From contig NW_021825176.1 of assembly GCF_006345805.1 (NCBI RefSeq), forward strand, positions 1-16,390: a stretch of DNA of 16,390 nt, in the 5' to 3' direction. The notes under the pieces were generated by a model. That model did not search any database. It was not told the origin of the DNA and saw nothing but the letters and a program-made list of their open reading frames with translations. The position numbers and the translations under genes are program-made. This document shows, piece after piece, positions 700 through 15,510 of this stretch. Position 1 is the stretch's first letter, and every line of letters starts with the position of its first letter. Source of the DNA: Octopus sinensis. Lineage: Eukaryota.

Positions 700-820
700 A
701 TATACTTTTCAAAACCTAGTACTAATAACACTGACCTGTTTTGTCGAATCGCGAAGTTACACAACACCGGTTGTCAAGCTGTGATGGGGTGGGTAACACA
801 GACGGAAAGACACACATAAT
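700..820 (-). mobile_element. Decayed fragment of the tRNA-derived CORE-like SINE (3' body)
   Basis: cctagtactaataacactgacctgttttgtcgaatcgcgaagttac...ggttgtcaagc...acacagac aligns by eye to the better preserved copy at 7976-8077. Confidence 0.6.
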
Positions 821-1115
821 ATATACATACATACATATATGTATGCATGTATGTATACATATATATATATATATATATAATATATATAATATAATTAATC
901 AATATAGGGTGGCAAAAAAATTTTGTAGAATCTTTTTGCCACCAGCGGCCTAGTGGGAAAAAATTAAATAGTCATAGACCATTTTTAAGTTCAACATCAA
1001 CAATCAAGGAACGGCCATAAAGGCCATTCACCCACTAGAAATAACAGCCAAGCTTCACCCGCAAATAAAGATTAATTCGTAAACAGGAGAAATTTAAAAA
1101 AACATTTACCCTGTA

Positions 1116-1220
1116 ATTTCTTGTACGATGCACCGTTTCATCTGCTGTTTAATGGTAACTAACCTGATTAAATTAATCAAGCCAATCTTCCATAGGCCCT
1201 CAGATTCTTCAGCAAGAAAT
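1116..1220 (-). ncRNA. Type I hammerhead ribozyme, array unit 1
   Basis: Minus strand: AUUUCUUG-CUGAAGA-AUCUG...CAGAU-GAAA-CGG UGCA UCG-UA^CAAGAAAU. Perfect 8 bp stem I, 5 bp proximal stem II with further pairing beyond it, stem III ACGG/UCGU, GUA cleavage triplet; predicted cut between 1124 and 1123. Confidence 0.9.
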
Positions 1221-1602
1221 AGCCAAGTCGGAACAGATATTTTCACGAGGCATTTCCGACCCTGCCAAGGTAATATCTGACCTAAATTTTTCAAATCGTC
1301 GCACTCGCGCCAAATTTATCGGCAGCAAATAATATAAGACCGTCGATTCCATTACGGAATTAACCAGAAAATTCATAATTAATCAATATAGGGTGGCAAA
1401 AAAATTGTGTAGATTTCTTTTTGCCACCAGCGGCCTAGTGGGAAAAAATTAAATAGTCATAGACCATTTTTAAGTTCAACATCAACAATCAAGGAACGGC
1501 CATAATAGGCCATTCACCCACTAGAAATAACAGCCAAGCTTCAACCGCAAATAAAGATTAATTCCGTAAACATGAGAAAATTTTAAAAACATTTACCCTG
1601 TA

Positions 1603-1707
1603 ATTTCTTGTACGATGCACCGTTTCATCTGCTGTTTAATGGTAAACTAACCTGATAAATTAAATCAAGCCAATCTTCATAGGCCCTCAGATTCTTCAGC
1701 AAGAAAT
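1603..1707 (-). ncRNA. Type I hammerhead ribozyme, array unit 2
   Basis: Same core and stems as unit 1 (atttcttg 1603-1610, gtttc 1622-1626, tcttcag 1693-1699, caagaaat 1700-1707 on +); predicted cut between 1611 and 1610. Confidence 0.9.
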
Positions 1708-2111
1708 AGCCAAGTCGGAACAGATATTTTCACGAGGCATTTCCGACCACTGCCAGGTATATCTGACCTAAATTTTTCAAATCGTCGCACTCCGCGCCAA
1801 ATTTATCGGCAGCAAATAAATGAAAGCCGTCGATTCCATTACGGAATTAACCAGAAAATTCATAATTAATCAATAAGGGTGGCAAAAAAATTTTGTAGAA
1901 TTCTTTTTGCCACCAGCGTCCTAGTGGGAAAAAATTAAATAGTCATAGACCATTTTTAAGTTTCAACCATCAACAATCAGGAACGGCCATGATAGGCCTT
2001 CACCCACTAGAACTAAACAGCCAAAGCTTCAACCGCAAATAAAGATTAATTCCGTAAACAGGAGGACATTAAATTTGTAAACAAGAAAATTTTAAAAACA
2101 TTTACCCTGTA

Positions 2112-2217
2112 ATTTCTTGTACGATGCCCCGTTTCATCTGCTGTTTAATGGTAACTAACCTGATTAAATTAAATCAAGCCAATCTTCCATAGGCCCTCAG
2201 ATTCTTCAGCAAGAAAT
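2112..2217 (-). ncRNA. Type I hammerhead ribozyme, array unit 3
   Basis: Same core and stems; the only change near the core is in the stem III loop (GGCA instead of UGCA). Predicted cut between 2120 and 2119. Confidence 0.9.
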
Positions 2218-2562
2218 AGCCAAGTCGGAACAGATATTTTCACGAGGCATTTCCGACCCTGCCAAGGTAATATCGTGACCTAAAATTTTCAAATCGTCGC
2301 ACTCGCCGCCAATTTATCGGCAGCAAATAAATATAAGCCGTCGATTCCATTACGGAATTAACCACAAAATTCATAATTAATCAATATAGGGTGGCAAAAA
2401 AATTTTTTGTAGAATTCTTTTTGCCACCAGCGTCCTAGTGGGAAAAAATTAATTCATAGAATAGAGACCAATTTTTAAGTTCAACATCAACAATCAAGGA
2501 ACGGCCATATAGGCCATTCACCCACTAGAAATAACAGCCAAAGCTTCAACCGCAAATAAAGA

Positions 2563-2609
2563 TTAATTCCGTAATGGAATCGACGGCTTATATTTATTTG
2601 CTGCCGATA
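2563..2609. repeat. 47 bp fold-back: perfect inverted copy of 2315-2361 capping the array
   Basis: ttaattccgtaatggaatcgacggcttatatttatttgctgccgata is the exact reverse complement of 2315-2361; the junction uses the 12 nt internal inverted motif ttaattccgtaa (2563-2574). Confidence 0.95.
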
Positions 2610-2617
2610 TATTTATA

Positions 2618-3042
2618 CTAGCAGTATCGACCGGCGTTGCTCGGGTTTGTAAGCGAAATAAATATATAAGCATTTTTAGAGATGTAAAGTATAATAGCCA
2701 TCTCAATATGGCTAACCACAAAGTGGGGGGGGGTTACTGTAGCTTTTTACGTTCTGAGATTTAATAATACATTTTTAGAGAGTTAATTTTTCCCATTTTT
2801 AATGCATTTTTGGCATATTTATATATGCCAAAAATGCATTAAAAATGGGAAAAATTTATGGTAATTTTTTTTTTAAATCGTAGACTCATGGTAGCCGCGC
2901 ACTAATACCCAGAAGGGCTCGATATGAATCACGACTATAAGATACCCGGTTTTGGTTAAACTGCACCGCAAAATGCGGGAGTAGTTAGGAATCTAAATCA
3001 TAGGAGACAGACAGCACACAACCTCACTTTTATATATAAAGA
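2618..3042 (-). mobile_element. Short non-autonomous Helitron (425 bp)
   Basis: On the minus strand it starts TCTTTATATATAAAAGTGAGGTTGTGTGCTGTCTGTC and ends with an imperfect GC-rich hairpin (ccgagcaacgccgg, 2631-2644) ~10 nt before CTAG. It is inserted between A (3043) and T (2617) with no TSD, the canonical Helitron termini. Confidence 0.85.
2785..2856. repeat. Perfect 34 bp inverted repeat with 4 nt loop inside the Helitron
   Basis: aatttttcccatttttaatgcatttttggcatat (2785-2818) / ttat / atatgccaaaaatgcattaaaaatgggaaaaatt (2823-2856). Confidence 0.95.
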
Positions 3043-3070
3043 TATATATATATATAATATATATATATAT

Positions 3071-3375
3071 AATCAGAATGAGCAACAAGAATGACTCCGG
3101 TAATTTGGTACGGACATATGAGGTAGTGGAGTCCCTCAACAGTTGAGGAACTCCACTACCTCATATGTTCTTAAAATTTAAATCCACATATTTGTCTGTA
3201 TATCTACCTTCTCTATAATGTTGCCACTTGATTAGAATATTTTTGTATTAATGGAAAACCTCTATAATTGGCTGATGAGTACTTAGCATTTTAAATCAGT
3301 TGTAATACTTACAACATTTAATAAAATGATGTAGTACGAAACGATCGTACCAAATTACCGGAGTCATTCTTGTTG

Positions 3376-3377
<2 letters not shown>
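3071..3377 (+). mobile_element. Short hammerhead-containing element with 31 bp inverted ends, embedded in (TA)n; Penelope-like/retrozyme-like
   Basis: 3082-3112 is the exact reverse complement of 3346-3376; nested hairpin 3114-3168 (19 bp outer arms plus cctcaa/ttgagg); hammerhead at 3265-3357; (TA)n on both sides. Family assignment is inference. Confidence 0.65.
3265..3357 (+). ncRNA. Type I hammerhead ribozyme (unrelated in sequence to the array ribozyme)
   Basis: UAAUUGG-CUGAUGA(3272-3278)-GUACU...AGUAC-GAAA(3338-3341)-CG AU CG-UA^CCAA(A)UUA. Stem II is extended by catttta/taaaatg and gttgtaa/ttacaac; stem III is the palindrome ACGAUCGU. Predicted cut between 3349 and 3350. Confidence 0.88.
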
Positions 3378-3408
<31 letters not shown>

Positions 3409-5660: not shown

Positions 5661-6012
5661 TCTTTTAATTTTTTAGTTCTTACATTCATTTGACTGCGGC
5701 AACGCTGAAGCAGCCTCTTGAATTCTTCGAACCCTGTATTTCTCTTTCATAAGCGTTGTACTTATTTTATCAGTCTGTTTTGCAGACTGATAAACACTCA
5801 AACACCTGTGGCCGAGCAGTGTTGGTGGATAAACACAGGTACAGAATACACAGAGAATGATAATCGACGGGCTCCTTTCAGTGTCCGCCTACCAAATCCT
5901 CTGATCGGCCAAATCTGTAGTTAAAGATACTTGCCCAAGGTGTCACGTCGGGGGACTGAACGCGGAACCACGTGTTTGGGAAACAAACTTTTTACCACAG
6001 AACCAAGCTACA
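5661..6012 (-). mobile_element. Near full-length, diverged CORE-like tRNA SINE
   Basis: Contains reverse complements of the head (tgtggtaaaaagtttgtttcccaaacac...gttcagtcc), the accttgggcaagt core and the gccgcagtcaaatga tail seen in other copies. Confidence 0.8.
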
Positions 6013-7309: not shown

Positions 7310-7850
7310 TGGAGTGCTCAATTCGAGATGTAGAGAACTTGGTTCGTGAAGAATCCATTGACCGATCTTCTGACTTTTCCGATGTCACGCCGGTTTCGGT
7401 GAATGGTTGAATGACCAAATCCAAGCTTCTCTGCTAGGTACGATGAGATTTTGTTCCACCCGGTTTGCAGGACGACCTCGTCGAGCTCAACAGATCTTCC
7501 AGGACGAGGCTCGTCTTCTAGGCTGTAGTTTCTGGCTCGGAATGTCTGGAACCTCTTATTGTCTGATTGCCATATACTACAATAATACGCCTTGCACTTC
7601 CCTTTGTGCTGTTGCCTTTATTGAACTCCTAAACCAAAATATGCTGAATATTCTCCTTTGTCACTTCGATTATAGCTTTGAAAAAATAACTGTTAAAATC
7701 GAAATGCATTCTTCAAAACTTACACTAAGAATAAGGAAGAGGTAAAATTACTACCTGCTTTGAAAGCAGGTTGATGCAGATATTTTATCCCGTCCCCCAC
7801 CGACTATTAGTTCATGCAATTGAAAAAATACGCATTATTTATGGGATGAC

Positions 7851-7854
<4 letters not shown>
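7310..7854 (-). mobile_element. Decayed mariner-family transposon, 5' half (TIR plus N-terminal transposase)
   Basis: Minus-strand translation from 7670: IEVTKENIQHILV*EFNKGNS...VYGNQTI / FQTFRARNYSLEDEPRPGRSVELDE...LAEKLGFGHSTIHR...IGKV / IGQWILHE, matching the mariner HTH region and WVPHEL motif. TIR-like TTAGGTCATCCCATAAATAATGCG at 7831-7854 adjoins TA. Confidence 0.85.
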
Positions 7855-7885
<31 letters not shown>

Positions 7886-7887
<2 letters not shown>

Positions 7888-8077
7888 TTTTACTTGTTTC
7901 AGTCATTTGATTGCGGCCATACTGGAGCACCGCCTTTAGTCGAATAAATGGATCCTAGGGCTTATTCTTTGTAAGCCTAGTATTTTTTCTGTCAGTGTCT
8001 TTTGCTGAACCGCTAAGTTACGGGGGCATAAACACACCAGCATCGGTTGTCAAGCGATGGTGGGGAACAAACACAGA
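7886..8077 (-). mobile_element. 3' half of CORE-like tRNA SINE
   Basis: Reverse complement contains cttgacaaccgatgctggtgtgttta...ttagcggttcagcaaaaga...ggcggtgctccagtatggccgcaatcaaatgactgaaacaagtaaaag. Confidence 0.9.
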
Positions 8078-9084: not shown

Positions 9085-10030
9085 AATATGTCAGGTGAAT
9101 TCGTTTGTGTTTTTACCCGATGATATTTGAATTAACATGAAAACCTTTCCATTGAACTGTTTTGAGTTTATTTTCTGTTTTGTAGCTGTTCTTCCTTTTC
9201 AGCTTTTGTTTGGTGTTTGTTTTTAATTTGAATAAATTTTATCTCTTTTTCCGACATATGACGATAGAGTGCCAAATAGAAAAAAAGGGATCATTTTTGA
9301 CACCTGATCCTCATCGCTTTCGGTCAGTATTTCAAAGATATCAAAGACACTCGAGACATTTGCGTGGTCTACAGTAATGGCACTATTTCTGAGAAAAAAA
9401 CTGGCAGAAATTGGTCTTCAAGCTTCAAGGAAAATACGACCCCACAGACTCTCCACGTTTCGGAAGAGCTCTTCAGCTCAATGAGAATCAGTTAAGTCAA
9501 TTTATCCAGAAAGACCTCACTAATCCACAAAGAACGAGCGCCACATTTGCTGAGCAAATCTACAAAGGAATTGGCGCAGCAGATGGGGGGCACTCGTGAT
9601 ACCATTGCTCGTCACCATCACTCGACGGCAACCCATCCAGCAACATGGTATGATTCTTGAACACAGCAACGCTCTTCCGCAAGCCGCTAATTTGATCGCA
9701 AATGCTTTTCAAGCTCTAGATTGCGAAGTTCTACTTCACCTGCTGTGTACTCTTGATATAACGCCTTCTGAATATAGCTTCTTTCGGTCGCTGTCCAACA
9801 GTCTGCCAGGCGTTTTTATCAACCATGACTCGAGGCTGAAAAAGTGGCATGTGGAATACTCCGAGTATTTTTTGTTTTTCCGTCAAACTATTGACAAACT
9901 AGTGGAAGGTTGACAAGAAGTCGTGAACAATGAACGGGAAAAGATATTATTGATTGGATTGTTGGAATTGTTGATGAAAACTAAGGATTAAAATAAATGG
10001 AATGAAACAAAAGAATTTATCTAATAACTA
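9085..10030 (+). mobile_element. Internally deleted, decayed mariner-family transposon
   Basis: From 9264: IECQIEKK/DHF*HLILIAF...RDICVVY (N-terminus), then YDPTDSPRFGRALQLNENQL...TIARH, jumping directly to the catalytic C-terminus ILEHSNALPQAAN...LDCEVLLHLLCTLDITPSEYSFFRSL (decayed HDNARPH and YSPDLAP motifs). Weak TIR similarity between 9089-9109 and 10007-10026. Confidence 0.85.
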
Positions 10031-10316: not shown

Positions 10317-10603
10317 GTCTCTTTTGCCGAACCGCTAGGTGACGGGGACGTAAACACACCAGCATCGGTGGTCAAGCGATGTTGGGGGGGGGGGCAAACA
10401 CAGACACACAAGTATATACACACACATACATACATATATGCGATGGGCTTCTTTCATTTTCCGTCTACCAAATCCACTCACAAGGCCTTGGTCGGCCCGA
10501 GGCTATAGTAGAAAACACTTGCCCAAGGTGCCACGCAGTGGGACTGAACCCGGAACCATATGGATCGTAAGCAAGCTACTTACCACAAGCCACTCCTACG
10601 CTA
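10317..10603 (-). mobile_element. CORE-like tRNA SINE, head plus body, 3'-truncated
   Basis: Well preserved: reverse complement reads gtggcttgtggtaagtagcttgc...gggttcagtcccactgcgtggcaccttgggcaagtgttttctactatagcctcgggccgacc... Confidence 0.92.
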
Positions 10604-10679
<76 letters not shown>

Positions 10680-10774
10680 GTGTGTGTGTGTATGTACATA
10701 TACATTTCTATATATACGTATACTGACGCACCTATATGTAAATATAAGCGTATGTATATTGTATATATACATGT

Positions 10775-10853
<79 letters not shown>

Positions 10854-11394: not shown

Positions 11395-11433
11395 CACCAC
11401 TACCACCACGACCGCAACTACTACTACTGCTCG

Positions 11434-11484
<51 letters not shown>

Positions 11485-11553
11485 CACTACTACTACTGCT
11501 GCTGCTGCTACTACTACTACTGCTGCTGCTACTACTATTACTACTACTACTAC
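11395..11553. repeat. (TAC)n/(TGC)n trinucleotide microsatellite
   Basis: Direct reading; source of the poly-Val ORF. Confidence 0.95.
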
Positions 11554-12355: not shown

Positions 12356-12559
12356 TTATATACACATGCATAAATGTTTGTGTGTATATATATATATGTA
12401 TATATATATATGTATATATGTGATTCTGTGTGATTGTATGTGTGTGTGTGTGCTTTAGTTTGATTAATTTATAATTGCACTTTCTGTCGTTTGAATTTGT
12501 GCTCATTATAAAATGAATTTTTCTAAAACCATCTTTTATATATTTAACAGGCGTTGTCA

Positions 12560-13307
12560 TGATGACAGACAGAAAAAAAGATGGCTTTGGATGACTAAAA
12601 GTGATTTAAAACCGGAAACGGAGGCTCTAATTTGTGCTGCCGGAGAGCAAGCACTAAGAACGAATTACATCAAGCGCAGAATAGACAACACATCCGAAAG
12701 TCGTAATTGCAGAATTTGCGGAAAAAATGGTGAAACCGTATGACATATTACCAGTCAATGTACGTCATTAGCCCAGAAAGAATATAAGAGACGTCATGGC
12801 AATATGGCAAAGATTTCCATTGGACTCTTTGCAACAAGTAATGACTTAACAGAGCAAAAAAGTGGTACGATCATAAACACGAAGGCATCATCGAAAATGA
12901 TATTGCAAGATCCTGTGGGATTTTATGATTCAGTGCGAGAGAGAATAGAAAGATAAACAGAGTTTATTGATGAAAGAACGCAAACGATGCTGGATCATAA
13001 ATATAGCATGCCCAGCTGACAACAAAGTTGGCGATAAGGAAGAAAGAAAAGTTGATAGACATGACATGTTAGCGTGGGAGGTTAGAGTTGTGGTCTATGA
13101 AAAAGGTTGTAAAAGTACCAATAATTTTCAGAGCCCTGAGAACAGTGAGTAAAAATATTGAGAAGTACATGGAACAAATAGGGGCTGCAATAAGGGTGGA
13201 GCACTTCGAGAAAATAGCACTGCATGGAATATTCCGGATGGTGCTCAAAAAATAAGGAGTGTTACCTTAGTTCACTGGTAGTGAACACCTGGCACCATAG
13301 AACATCT
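12560..13307 (+). mobile_element. 5'-truncated, decayed R4/Dong-like non-LTR retrotransposon (zinc knuckle, restriction-like endonuclease, 3' UTR)
   Basis: Translation LKPETEALICAAGEQALRTNY...CRICGKNGETV*HITSQC (CCHC, 12708-12761)...AQKEYKRRH / KILWDFMIQ / CWIINIACPADNKVGDKEERKV / IALHGIFRMVLKK* (stop 13253-13255), with frameshifts and stops; 3' hairpin gttcact ggt agtgaac. Clade call rests on remembered motif similarity. Confidence 0.8.
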
Positions 13308-13629: not shown

Positions 13630-13674
<45 letters not shown>

Positions 13675-13702
13675 CTCTATCTCTCTCTCTCTCTCTCTAT
13701 AT

Positions 13703-13788
<86 letters not shown>

Positions 13789-13857
13789 GCATATATGTAT
13801 GTATGTATTTGTGCATGTGCGTATGAACATATTTATACACACACACACACACACCCT

Positions 13858-13895
<38 letters not shown>

Positions 13896-13923
13896 CACAT
13901 ATACACACAAATATATGTGTATA

Positions 13924-14300
13924 GGCGCAGCGTGTCTGTGTGGTAAGAAGCTTAGATCCCGACCACATGTTTCCGGTTTCAGTCCCACTACATGGCACCT
14001 GGGCCAGTGTCTTCTACTATAGCCTCAGGCTGACCAAACCCTTCTGAGTAGATTTGGTAAACGGAAACTGAAAGAAGCCCACCGTATACACATGTGTGTG
14101 TGTGGGTATTTGTGAGAGTACCTGTATTTATCACCCTACCATCACTTGACAACCTATGTTGATGTGTTTACGTCCCTGCAACCTAGAAGTTCTGCAAAAA
14201 AAAACCGATAAAATAAGTAATATGCTTGCAAAGAATAAGTCCTGGACTCGATTTGTTCGATTAAATGCGGTGCTCCGGCATGACTGAAAGAAGTAAAAGA
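13924..14300 (+). mobile_element. Full-length diverged CORE-like tRNA SINE
   Basis: tRNA-like head (ggcgcag...tgtggtaagaagc...ggtttcagtccc), core gcacctgggccagtgtcttctactatagcctc, internal (TG)n and gactgaaagaagtaaaaga tail. Confidence 0.88.
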
Positions 14301-14361
14301 ACATATACATATATATTTCACACACATATATATATATTAGACACATATGTATATATAAATG

Positions 14362-14889: not shown

Positions 14890-14978
14890 AGGCATGATGG
14901 TATTGTTGCTGGTGGTGGTGGTGCTGGTGGTGGCGGTGGTGGCGACGGCAGTTGTAGCGGTAGTGATGATGTTCAGTA

Positions 14979-15012
<34 letters not shown>

Positions 15013-15510
15013 GGTGTTGGTGGTGATGATGATGATGATGATGATGGTGGTGATGATGATGATGATGTTGGGGGTGATGGTGATGATGATGATGATGATG
15101 GTAATGGTGATGATGGTGGTGGTGATGATGATGATGGTGATGATGATGATGGTGATGGTGATGATGATGATGATGATGGTGATGGTGATGATGTTCATGA
15201 CGGCCTTGGGTAAAGATAAGGATTGTGATGAAAATAGGGATTGGGATTATCGTGATGATGATGATGATGGATGTGGTGGTGTGGTTGTGGTGGTGGTGAT
15301 GGTAGTGGTCGTCGTCGTCGTGGTAGTCGAGTTGGTGGTGAAGGTTGTGACATCAATGGTGGTTGTGATACTAATGATAATGATCATGATAGTAGTGATG
15401 ATGGTGATGGTGGTTGCGTTGGTTTTGTTGTGAATAGTAGGTATTGGTTGTAGTGACAACGATGAGGACGACGACGACGATGGTAATGCTGCTGCTGATA
15501 ATGATGACAC
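14890..15510. repeat. Compound (GAT)n/(GGT)n/(CGT)n trinucleotide microsatellite
   Basis: Direct reading; source of the poly-Met/Val and poly-Ile/Thr ORFs. Confidence 0.95.

What the first reader, a model, noticed from the sequence alone, without database searches (positions are those of the whole stretch)
891..2574. Tandem array with an intact hammerhead ribozyme in every full unit: candidate retrozyme producing ~490-510 nt (circular) RNAs
Seen: each of the three full units encodes, on the minus strand, the complete hammerhead core (CUGAAGA, GAAA, GUA) with a perfect 8 bp stem I and a 5 bp stem II extended by further pairing (AUGG/CCAU, GAUUGGCU/GGUUAGUU, UGAUU/AAUCA). Core and proximal stems are invariant although the units differ by many indels elsewhere. 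Predicted cuts at 2120/2119, 1611/1610 and 1124/1123 release monomers of 509 and 487 nt. Established: tandem repeats with one type I hammerhead per unit (newt satellite 2, Schistosoma Sm-alpha, cricket pDo500, non-LTR retrozymes of coral, mussel and axolotl) are transcribed, self-processed to monomers and can accumulate as circRNAs. Inference: this is such a non-autonomous retrozyme, with a relatively long monomer; I do not know of a described octopus family with this sequence. Caveat: homopolymer indels between units suggest long-read errors, so copy number and divergence may be partly artefactual.
Basis: partly seen in the sequence, partly recalled or inferred. Interest (0 to 1): 0.92.

Follow-up and report, generated by a model that had tools for sequence, protein, structure and literature searches.

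The report
Hammerhead ribozyme tandem repeat (retrozyme-like)
A 3.4-copy tandem repeat of about 490 bp carries a well-formed self-cleaving hammerhead ribozyme motif in every full unit, which makes it an ordinary new family of the "retrozyme"/hammerhead-satellite kind already known from many animals, not a new type of element.

Summary
Window 891-2574 is a 3.4-unit tandem array with a 487 nt period. Each of three units carries a complete type I hammerhead on the minus strand, and cuts after GUA at 2120, 1611 and 1124 would release 509 and 487 nt monomers. No motif this strict appeared in 1000 shuffles, and the core and proximal stems do not vary between units.

New support:
- The predicted three-way junction is the minimum-energy fold, or within 0.4 kcal/mol of it.
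- Helix III is weak alone but near-palindromic, so two neighbouring units are predicted to form a classical double hammerhead.
- Folding is strand-specific.
- A second, unrelated hammerhead element lies 1.2 kb away (3072-3377, plus strand).
- Both elements abut (TA)n tracts, a reported insertion target of some Penelope-like elements.

Weaknesses:
- Rfam Hammerhead_1 scores only 16 bits against a cut-off of 34.
- Pair 10.1-11.1 is A-U, not the conserved G-C.
- No other copies were found in any reachable collection, so covariation, copy number, expression, circularity and the host (octopus unconfirmed) are untested.

Verdict: a new member of a known kind, a non-LTR retrozyme or hammerhead satellite. 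Its monomer length lies within the published range. Interest is modest.

The parts
891..2574 (-). Tandem array of 3.4 units of 487-509 bp. In the ribozyme sense it runs: 5' partial unit 2574-2120, monomer 2119-1611 (509 nt), monomer 1610-1124 (487 nt), 3' partial unit 1123-891.
   Evidence: TRF, the repeat finder, unit alignment
2112..2217 (-). Hammerhead 1, type I. Predicted cut between 2120 and 2119. Loop 3 carries G where units 2 and 3 carry U.
   Evidence: Scan. The MFE is the exact three-way junction, -29.5 kcal/mol, z -3.3. Rfam RF00163 16.0 bits on 2114-2215.
1603..1707 (-). Hammerhead 2, type I. Predicted cut between 1611 and 1610.
   Evidence: Scan. The hammerhead-constrained fold is within 0.4 kcal/mol of the MFE.
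1116..1220 (-). Hammerhead 3, type I. Predicted cut between 1124 and 1123.
   Evidence: Scan. The hammerhead-constrained fold is within 0.4 kcal/mol of the MFE; the double hammerhead with unit 2 has ddG -16.3 kcal/mol.
2563..2614 (+). Inverted 52 nt copy of an internal unit segment at the sense 5' end of the array. It joins the array head-to-head through a 12 nt overlap, 2563-2574 (TTAATTCCGTAA), whose reverse complement TTACGGAATTAA also occurs in the unit.
   Evidence: the repeat finder I1-I3: 98% to the adjacent unit, 94% and 87% to the others; BLAST
819..893 (.). (TA)n-rich microsatellite abutting the sense 3' end of the array
   Evidence: TRF, sequence
3072..3377 (+). Second, unrelated hammerhead-bearing element of about 306 nt, flanked by (TA)n at 3031-3071 and 3378-3406. 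It has 31 nt perfect inverted repeats (3082-3112 / 3346-3376) and a long hairpin at 3115-3167.
3267..3355 (+). Hammerhead of the second element: CUGAUGA, G10.1-C11.1, 59 nt helix II, palindromic helix III ACGAUCGU. Predicted cut after 3349.
   Evidence: Scan; Rfam RF00163 19.2 bits, E 0.016, model positions 1-45 of 45; helix III as a dimer -12.0 versus 0 kcal/mol as a monomer

Best explanation
The array is a genomic copy of a non-autonomous, non-coding hammerhead repeat of the non-LTR retrozyme / hammerhead-satellite kind.

Shown in the sequence:
- Each full unit encodes a type I hammerhead on the minus strand.
- Helix III is weak as a monomer but near-palindromic.

Inferred mechanism:
1. The minus strand is transcribed as a multimer.
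2. Neighbouring ribozymes, 487-509 nt apart on one transcript, pair through helix III and exchange helix I strands to form a double hammerhead.
3. Each cuts after GUA (2120, 1611, 1124), releasing 509 and 487 nt linear monomers with 5'-OH and 2',3'-cyclic phosphate ends.
4. A host tRNA ligase may circularise the monomers.
5. New copies are made by the reverse transcriptase of an autonomous element, most likely a Penelope-like element, inserting at (TA)n. The inverted 52 nt fragment would be a snap-back of the cDNA at the unit's own 12 nt inverted repeat.
For: - All 13 core nucleotides, A15.1-U16.1 and H17 = A are present, with three helices, in three of three full units.
- No equivalent motif occurred in 1000 shuffles.
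- The hammerhead fold is the MFE (unit 1) or within 0.4 kcal/mol of it (units 2 and 3).
- Hammerhead_1 is the top Rfam family over the full model.
- Cofolding two hammerhead domains yields the double hammerhead as the MFE, with a 12 bp intermolecular helix III: ddG -16.3 kcal/mol for units 2+3 and -11.2 for units 1+2. Helix III alone scores -19.5 as a dimer against -1.2 as a monomer.
- The fold is strand-specific. The hammerhead domain scores -25 to -29.5 in sense against -15.6 to -17.8 in antisense, owing to 6 G-U pairs. The circular monomer has z -5.6 in sense against -2.3 in antisense, and helices I and II are kept in the whole-monomer fold.
- Core and proximal stems are invariant, 0 of 37 columns against 12% overall.
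- The unit is non-coding. The longest ORF is 62 aa, with no relatives among 5.8 billion and 1.84 billion proteins.
- GC is 37%.
- An independent, more canonical hammerhead element lies 1.2 kb away and is also in (TA)n.
- Literature match: metazoan type I hammerheads sit in tandem repeats, have a short helix III with a palindromic loop and act as dimers (PMC4209133). Such repeats give linear and circular RNAs in coral, mussel and axolotl (PMC7229834). Retrozymes are related to the pLTRs of Penelope-like elements, and 75% of families reach at most 7 units (10.64898/2026.07.22.740005). Penelope-like element insertions show a (TA)n bias (reported for the Naiad clade) and adjacent inverted truncated copies (PMC8557442).
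Against: - Rfam scores of 16.0 bits (array) and 19.2 bits (second element) are far below the gathering score of 34, and nothing was reported in the standard whole-window search.
- Pair 10.1-11.1 is A-U, whereas G10.1-C11.1 is described as highly conserved (PMC4209133). Activity may therefore be low.
- No internal loop in helix I is evident that could contact helix II.
- With only three near-identical copies there is no covariation.
- No other copy was found in viral, metagenome or prokaryotic genome collections, or through translated searches. The reachable collections hold little animal genome DNA and no copy of this repeat, so this says little either way.
- No Penelope-like reverse transcriptase or endonuclease was seen among the window's ORFs. 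The only reverse-transcriptase-like piece is a LINE 3' end.
- No target-site duplication can be read in the microsatellite.
- Expression, cleavage and circularity are untested.
Confidence: 0.65

Rival explanations
1. Decayed relic. The repeat descends from a hammerhead-bearing retrozyme or satellite, but this copy is silent or catalytically dead, and the array is now just a short tandem repeat maintained by unequal exchange.
For: - The A10.1-U11.1 pair replaces the conserved G-C (PMC4209133).
- The Rfam score is sub-threshold.
- There are only 3.4 units, diverged by 4-9% with indels and a 21-22 nt insertion.
- Unit 1 has a loop-3 change that weakens the dimer helix III (-10.1 versus -19.5 kcal/mol).
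- The array sits among degenerate mariner and LINE debris.
Against: - Core and proximal stems are untouched in all three copies although 12% of columns vary.
- G-U-rich, strand-specific helices are preserved.
- Compensatory changes at 10.1-11.1 occur in natural cricket hammerheads (PMC2837043).
Confidence: 0.2
2. Tandem pseudo-LTR or 3'-end fragments of an autonomous Penelope-like element, that is, a truncated composite insertion and not a dedicated non-autonomous retrozyme family.
For: - Penelope-like elements insert as partial tandems, often with an adjacent inverted truncated copy and optional terminal extensions; a (TA)n bias is reported for the Naiad clade (PMC8557442, PMC11167929).
- Those features are seen here at 2563-2614 and 819-893.
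- Retrozymes and pLTRs are sequence relatives (10.64898/2026.07.22.740005).
Against: - There is no reverse transcriptase or GIY-YIG coding remnant in or next to the array.
- Three complete 487-509 bp units, each with its own ribozyme, match the retrozyme layout.
- The hammerhead has a full helix III and no bulged base between positions 9 and 10.1, unlike the minimal hammerheads of metazoan Penelope-like elements (PMC4209133).
Confidence: 0.08
3. A chance hammerhead-like motif in an ordinary satellite, triplicated simply because the unit is repeated.
For: The three copies are one evolutionary event. My analytic estimate of about 2e-5 per 16 kb window still predicts a few chance motifs of this stringency in a gigabase-scale genome (calibrated). 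Rfam is sub-threshold.
Against: Several independent features would have to coincide:
- a near-palindromic helix III giving a 12 bp dimer helix;
- 17 further base pairs extending helix II;
- strand-specific G-U pairing;
- location in a tandem repeat;
- a second independent hammerhead 1.2 kb away, when the loose motif occurs 0.014 times per window.
Confidence: 0.03
4. The tandem copy number is an assembly artefact of error-prone long reads, with one or two real units over-expanded.
For: Many inter-unit differences are 1 nt indels in short runs.
Against: - Ninety bp of inverted-repeat arms within 1 kb, including T5 runs, show 1 mismatch and no indel. If unit differences were all errors, 4-8 differences would be expected (P 0.002-0.11).
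- Units also differ by 33 substitution columns and by a 21-22 nt insertion.
Confidence: 0.04

Closest known systems
Non-LTR retrozymes of invertebrates, e.g. Mytilus galloprovincialis 350-390 bp repeats and Acropora 220-245 bp repeats (Cervera & de la Pena 2020, PMC7229834)
   Same: One type I hammerhead per unit; non-coding tandem units of a few hundred bp; GC below 50%; strongly self-paired monomer; size variants caused by roughly 20 nt indels.
   Different: The unit is longer (487-509 bp) than the 170-400 nt reported there. Helix II is about 66 nt instead of about 4 bp plus a loop. Pair 10.1-11.1 is A-U. No sequence similarity was tested, because no retrozyme library was at hand. Expression and circularity are unknown here.
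Dolichopoda cave-cricket pDo500 satellite (PMC2837043)
   Same: A hammerhead embedded in each unit of a satellite repeat. The name pDo500 suggests a unit of about 500 bp; I did not check the unit length. Double-hammerhead model; hammerhead region more conserved than the rest; natural variation at 10.1-11.1 is tolerated.
   Different: Different phylum and sequence. pDo500 conservation is documented across 12 species and 198 sequences, whereas only three copies are available here.
Newt satellite 2 and axolotl retrozymes (PMC6155905, PMC7229834)
   Same: Tandem type I hammerheads whose weak helix III makes them work mainly as dimers on multimeric transcripts.
   Different: Vertebrate elements of about 330 bp with short helix II and defined helix I internal loops. 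Here helix I is a plain 8 bp duplex.
Hammerheads in the pseudo-LTRs of Penelope-like elements (PMC4209133, PMC8557442, PMC11167929)
   Same: Palindromic positions 15.2-16.2 and loop 3; a longer than usual helix II; pairs of hammerheads on opposite strands a few hundred bp apart; partial tandems, adjacent inverted fragments and (TA)n targets (the (TA)n bias is reported for the Naiad clade).
   Different: No reverse transcriptase / GIY-YIG ORF. A full helix III instead of the minimal form. [quoted passage not shown] G10.1-C11.1 is absent in the array, though present in the second element.

Membership tests
Hammerhead ribozyme, type I (Rfam RF00163) | Conserved core C3 U4 G5 A6 N7 G8 A9 / G12 A13 A14, A15.1-U16.1, H17 not G | tested here: met
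   CUGAAGA ... GAAA ... GUA is present in all three units. The same holds for the second element (CUGAUGA ... GAAA ... GUA).
Hammerhead ribozyme, type I (Rfam RF00163) | Three helices around the core, with helix I open (5' and 3' ends in helix I) | tested here: met
   Helix I 8 bp, helix II 5 bp plus extension, helix III 4 bp. The three-way junction is the MFE or within 0.4 kcal/mol of it.
Hammerhead ribozyme, type I (Rfam RF00163) | Conserved G10.1-C11.1 pair | tested here: not met
   The array has A10.1-U11.1 in all three units. The second element at 3267-3355 has G-C.
Hammerhead ribozyme, type I (Rfam RF00163) | Score at or above Rfam's gathering threshold (34 bits) | tested here: not met
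   No hit at gathering score. The array scores 16.0 bits (E 0.21) and the second element 19.2 bits (E 0.016). Both are the top family over model positions 1-45 of 45, and both carry inserts of 57 and 51 nt in helix II.
Hammerhead ribozyme, type I (Rfam RF00163) | Tertiary contact between a helix I loop or bulge and loop 2 | tested here: inconclusive
   Helix I is an uninterrupted 8 bp duplex. Helix II has an internal loop after 5 bp that could serve as the contact. No 3D test was possible.
Hammerhead ribozyme, type I (Rfam RF00163) | Site-specific self-cleavage | not testable with these tools
   Needs in vitro transcription of one-unit and two-unit constructs.
Non-LTR retrozyme (Cervera & de la Pena 2020) | Type I hammerhead in each unit of a short tandem repeat | tested here: met
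   Three hammerheads in 3.4 units. The 487-509 bp unit is above the 150-450 bp range given in PMC7229834 but inside the 51-972 bp range of 10.64898/2026.07.22.740005.
Non-LTR retrozyme (Cervera & de la Pena 2020) | Non-coding, no LTRs, GC below 50% | tested here: met
   The longest unit ORF is 62 aa and has no relatives. The array is plain head-to-tail units. GC is 0.37. A primer-binding site and polypurine tract were not searched for specifically.
Non-LTR retrozyme (Cervera & de la Pena 2020) | Monomer predicted to fold into a stable, highly self-paired structure | tested here: met
   The 487 nt monomer has circular MFE -136.6, z -5.6, 62% paired. The 509 nt monomer has z -2.9. The antisense strand has z -2.3. 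The fold is branched, not a clean rod.
Non-LTR retrozyme (Cervera & de la Pena 2020) | Dispersed multicopy family in the host genome, with target-site duplications | not testable with these tools
   No host genome was available. There were 0 hits in viral, metagenome and prokaryotic genome contigs and no other copy in the window. The ends lie in a (TA)n tract and at an inverted fragment, so no target-site duplication can be read.
Non-LTR retrozyme (Cervera & de la Pena 2020) | Accumulation as linear and circular RNA of monomer length | not testable with these tools
   No transcriptome access.
Penelope-like element (autonomous) | Reverse transcriptase plus GIY-YIG endonuclease ORF between pseudo-LTRs | tested here: not met
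   No such ORF in or near the array. The only reverse-transcriptase-like piece in the window is a LINE 3' end at 12495-13290.

The most novel reading that the evidence does not exclude
Both hammerheads in this window share an unusual architecture although their sequences are unrelated: a 5 bp proximal helix II, then an internal loop, then a long AU-rich distal hairpin (59-67 nt in total), with a palindromic helix III. Both also escape Rfam's threshold. They could represent a lineage-specific class of retrozymes (possibly cephalopod; host unverified) that process only as double hammerheads, are invisible to standard annotation, and yield abundant 0.3-0.5 kb circular RNAs. The array's ribozyme would then be a naturally active A10.1-U11.1 variant.
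Probability: 0.2. Interest if true: 0.55.

Novelty: new member of a known kind. Interest (0 to 1): 0.3.

Why it matters
If confirmed, this adds one retrozyme family, and probably a second one nearby, to a class already known from cnidarians, molluscs, insects, flatworms and most non-avian, non-mammalian vertebrates. No paper in the searchable library describes such elements in cephalopods. If the host is an octopus, these would be first examples there, and a handle on ribozyme-made circular RNAs in that group.

There is also a practical point. Hammerheads with long helix II inserts and a non-G-C 10.1-11.1 pair score at half of Rfam's cut-off, so routine annotation will under-count them.

None of this changes how such elements are thought to work.

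Tried and rejected
- Rfam at gathering score on the whole window and at E<=10 on 800-2750 gave only microsatellite-driven miRNA noise. Only very short slices recovered Hammerhead_1.
- My first motif pattern used a helix II gap that was too short and found nothing.
- Exact-pattern scans for both halves of the array hammerhead found 0 hits in viral contigs, metagenome contigs and prokaryotic genomes. The second element also had 0 hits in viral contigs.
- Translated searches with the unit's ORF found no candidate. The full HMMER scan gave one marginal hit (E 7e-4), a cysteine-rich repeat protein and clearly spurious.
- Exact-protein look-ups of two window ORFs were not on record.
- Host identification failed. 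The LINE fragment's best relatives are unnamed ENA contigs at 69-76% amino-acid and about 72% nucleotide identity. The named hits are coral and sponge proteins. So octopus is neither confirmed nor refuted.
Selected ORFs gave only weak zf-RVT and HTH_48 hits.
- No tRNA-like part was found.
- A relaxed scan allowing one core mismatch found no further hammerhead relics.
- The two hammerhead elements share no sequence similarity.
- A MITE reading of the second element was considered and judged weaker, because the left inverted repeat is set back 10 nt from the (TA)n tract.
Full report

Yes. Tandem Repeats Finder reports one long-period array in the window, 891-2574, with period 487, 3.4 copies, 92% matches and 5% indels. 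Gapless repeat families give unit spacings of 484-518.

I wrote a structure-aware hammerhead scan. It requires CUGANGA, a closed helix II, GAAA, a helix III beginning A15.1-U16.1, H17 not G, and a helix I formed by the flanks. It finds three motifs in the array, all on the minus strand, with H17 at 2120, 1611 and 1124. Each has:
- an 8 bp perfect helix I (AUUUCUUG/CAAGAAAU);
- core CUGAAGA;
- a 5 bp closing helix II (AUCUG/CAGAU) around a 66-67 nt insert;
- GAAA;
- a 4 bp helix III (ACGG/UCGU);
- GUA.

The cut-to-cut monomers are 509 nt (2119-1611) and 487 nt (1610-1124).

In 1000 dinucleotide-preserving shuffles of the window, a loose version of the motif occurs 0.014 times per window. A motif as strict as the observed one never occurs. 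An analytic estimate that reproduces the loose figure (0.017) gives about 2e-5 per window for the strict motif. That is my own calculation. It would still allow a handful of chance motifs in a gigabase-scale genome, so the extra features below matter.

**2. What Rfam says**

At gathering scores the window has no Rfam match. A 2 kb search at E<=10 shows only microsatellite noise.

On short slices, where the filters are laxer, Hammerhead_1 (RF00163) is the best family for the array ribozyme. It matches 2114-2215 on the minus strand at 16.0 bits, E 0.21, covering model positions 1-45 of 45. The alignment places every core position correctly and pays for a 57 nt insertion in helix II. The gathering score is 34, so membership by Rfam's own criterion is not met.

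**3. Structure**

- Monomer fold. The unit 1 ribozyme folds as the exact three-way junction at the minimum free energy (-29.5 kcal/mol, z -3.3). For units 2 and 3 the hammerhead-constrained fold is within 0.4 kcal/mol of the optimum.
- Helix III. It is weak alone (-1.2 to -2.0 kcal/mol). Its sequence ACGGUGCAUCGU is near-palindromic, and as a homodimer it forms 12 base pairs including two G-U pairs (-19.5 kcal/mol).
- Double hammerhead. Cofolding two neighbouring ribozyme domains gives, as the optimum, the classical double hammerhead. It has an intermolecular helix III and swapped helix I strands. It is 16.3 kcal/mol (units 2+3) or 11.2 kcal/mol (units 1+2) better than two monomers. This is the architecture described for most metazoan type I hammerheads: a short helix III, a palindromic loop, and action as dimers in tandem repeats (PMC4209133, PMC6155905).
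- Strand specificity. The ribozyme domain scores -25 to -29.5 kcal/mol in sense against -15.6 to -17.8 in antisense, because six pairs are G-U. The whole 487 nt monomer folded as a circle has z -5.6 in sense against -2.3 in antisense, and it keeps helices I and II.

**4. Variation between units**

In a three-copy alignment, 55 of 461 columns vary (33 substitution columns, 22 indel columns). The ribozyme domain has 5 of 99 variable columns against 50 of 362 elsewhere. None of the 37 core and proximal-stem columns varies (P about 0.009). The eight helix I 3' positions are also identical in all three units.

The only substitution in the ribozyme is in loop 3 (G in unit 1, U in units 2 and 3), and it weakens the dimer helix of unit 1. 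With three copies there can be no covariation test.

Three inverted repeats within 1 kb of the array total 90 bp of arms, including T5 runs. They differ at one position with no indel, where 4-8 differences would be expected if the unit divergence were all error (P 0.002-0.11). Unit 1 also carries a real 21-22 nt insertion.

**5. Ends and surroundings**

In the ribozyme sense, the 3' end of the array runs into a (TA)n-rich microsatellite at 819-893.

The 5' end is capped by a 52 nt inverted copy of an internal unit segment (2563-2614). It joins head-to-head through a 12 nt overlap at 2563-2574 (TTAATTCCGTAA), whose reverse complement also occurs in the unit. It is 98% identical to the adjacent unit and 94% and 87% to the others. 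This junction is what a snap-back of nascent cDNA at the unit's own 12 nt inverted repeat would produce. That reading is an inference; template switching during DNA replication would give the same result.

Partial tandems, adjacent inverted truncated copies and a (TA)n target bias are described for Penelope-like element insertions; the (TA)n bias is reported for the Naiad clade (PMC8557442).

The unit has no coding capacity. Its longest ORF is 62 aa, with no relatives in a 5.8 billion protein word search. A full HMMER scan of 1.84 billion representatives gave only one spurious marginal hit.

The rest of the window is repeat debris. It holds a LINE 3' end at 12495-13290 (weak zf-RVT), degenerate mariner pieces (weak HTH_48), dispersed repeats and many microsatellites. 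No Penelope-like ORF is present.

**6. A second hammerhead element**

The same scan found a fourth motif on the plus strand at 3268-3353.
- It is more canonical than the array ribozyme: CUGAUGA, G10.1-C11.1 and a perfectly palindromic helix III ACGAUCGU (-12.0 kcal/mol as a dimer against 0 as a monomer).
- Rfam Hammerhead_1 is again the top hit, at 19.2 bits, E 0.016, over the full model.
- Like the array ribozyme, it has a long helix II (59 nt).
- It lies in a 306 nt element (3072-3377) bounded on both sides by (TA)n. The element has 31 nt perfect inverted repeats and a 25 bp hairpin. Folded as a circle it has z -14.5.
- It shares no sequence with the array.

It is most simply a solo monomer of another retrozyme family. 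Solo monomers are common in the vertebrate survey (10.64898/2026.07.22.740005), and hammerheads on opposite strands a few hundred bp apart were noted in Schistosoma (PMC4209133). A second independent hammerhead 1.2 kb away makes a chance origin for the first very unlikely.

**7. How it most likely works**

Shown: the motif, its fold, the dimer potential, the strand bias and the array anatomy.

Inferred from the named families:
1. The minus strand is transcribed as a multimer.
2. Neighbouring units form a double hammerhead.
3. Cleavage after GUA releases 509 and 487 nt RNAs with 5'-OH and 2',3'-cyclic phosphate ends.
4. A tRNA ligase circularises them. This was the conclusion of in vitro ligation assays for the coral, mussel and axolotl elements (PMC7229834).
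5. The reverse transcriptase of a Penelope-like element copies them back into (TA)n sites.

The main doubt about activity is the A10.1-U11.1 pair. G10.1-C11.1 is called highly conserved (PMC4209133), although compensatory changes at these positions occur in the cricket satellite (PMC2837043). From memory, and not verified here, replacing this pair lowers but does not abolish activity in minimal ribozymes.

**8. Comparison with what is known, and novelty**

The element works like, and by every sequence-level criterion resembles, a non-LTR retrozyme or hammerhead satellite. Unit length is not exceptional: published retrozyme consensus lengths span 51-972 bp, and the name of the cricket pDo500 satellite suggests a unit near 500 bp, which I did not check.

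Membership remains provisional. Self-cleavage, RNA products and genomic dispersal could not be tested, and two hammerhead criteria are not met for the array (Rfam threshold, G10.1-C11.1).

No related sequence was found in the reachable collections. These hold little animal genome DNA and no copy of this repeat.

The host could not be identified. The LINE fragment's best relatives are unnamed ENA contigs at 69-76% identity, and the named hits are coral and sponge proteins. No paper in the library links retrozymes or hammerhead ribozymes to cephalopods beyond a passing mention.

**Verdict**

This is a new member of a known kind, and interest is modest at 0.3.

Noticed in passing
window 3072-3377 (+); hammerhead 3267-3355, cut after 3349: A second, sequence-unrelated element carrying a hammerhead (G10.1-C11.1, palindromic helix III ACGAUCGU, 59 nt helix II; Rfam RF00163 19.2 bits). 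It is flanked by (TA)n on both sides, has 31 nt perfect inverted repeats (3082-3112 / 3346-3376) and a long hairpin at 3115-3167. It is probably a solo monomer of another retrozyme family; a MITE-like reading is not excluded.
   Followed up: partly
window 2563-2614 (+): A 52 nt inverted copy of an internal unit segment caps the array. It is joined through a 12 nt overlap (TTAATTCCGTAA) whose reverse complement also occurs in the unit, and it is closest (98%) to the adjacent unit. It looks like a snap-back or template-switch junction.
   Followed up: partly
window 2785-2856: A perfect 34 nt-arm palindrome with a 4 nt spacer, in the 457 bp spacer between the two hammerhead elements. Its origin is unknown.
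   Followed up: no
window about 2068-2094 (-): Unit 1 carries a 21-22 nt insertion relative to the other units, a local duplication around UGUUUAC. This accounts for the 509 versus 487 nt monomers. It resembles the roughly 20 nt size variants reported for coral retrozymes.
   Followed up: partly
window 12495-13290 (+): A degenerate 3' end of a LINE (weak zf-RVT, several stops). It is about 72% identical at the DNA level to LINE copies on unnamed ENA contigs (ERZ25066843, ERZ25042219). It gave no usable clue to the host.
   Followed up: partly
window 9301-9910 (+) and 7321-7617 (-): Degenerate mariner-type transposase fragments. There is a weak HTH_48 hit at 9301-9492. The minus-strand piece looks like a mariner N-terminus by eye only.
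   Followed up: partly
window 10322-10851 vs 13669-14199; 7851-8065 vs 14134-14340; 5865-5999 vs 10441-10587: Dispersed repeats at 71-78% identity, some inverted. These suggest several copies of an unidentified short interspersed element in the window.
   Followed up: no
window 11417-11553, 14910-15193: Long trinucleotide microsatellites, (ACT)n and (ATG/TGG)n, alongside very frequent (TA)n, (AC)n and (ATAC)n tracts. The window is 16 kb of repeat-rich, apparently gene-free DNA.
   Followed up: no
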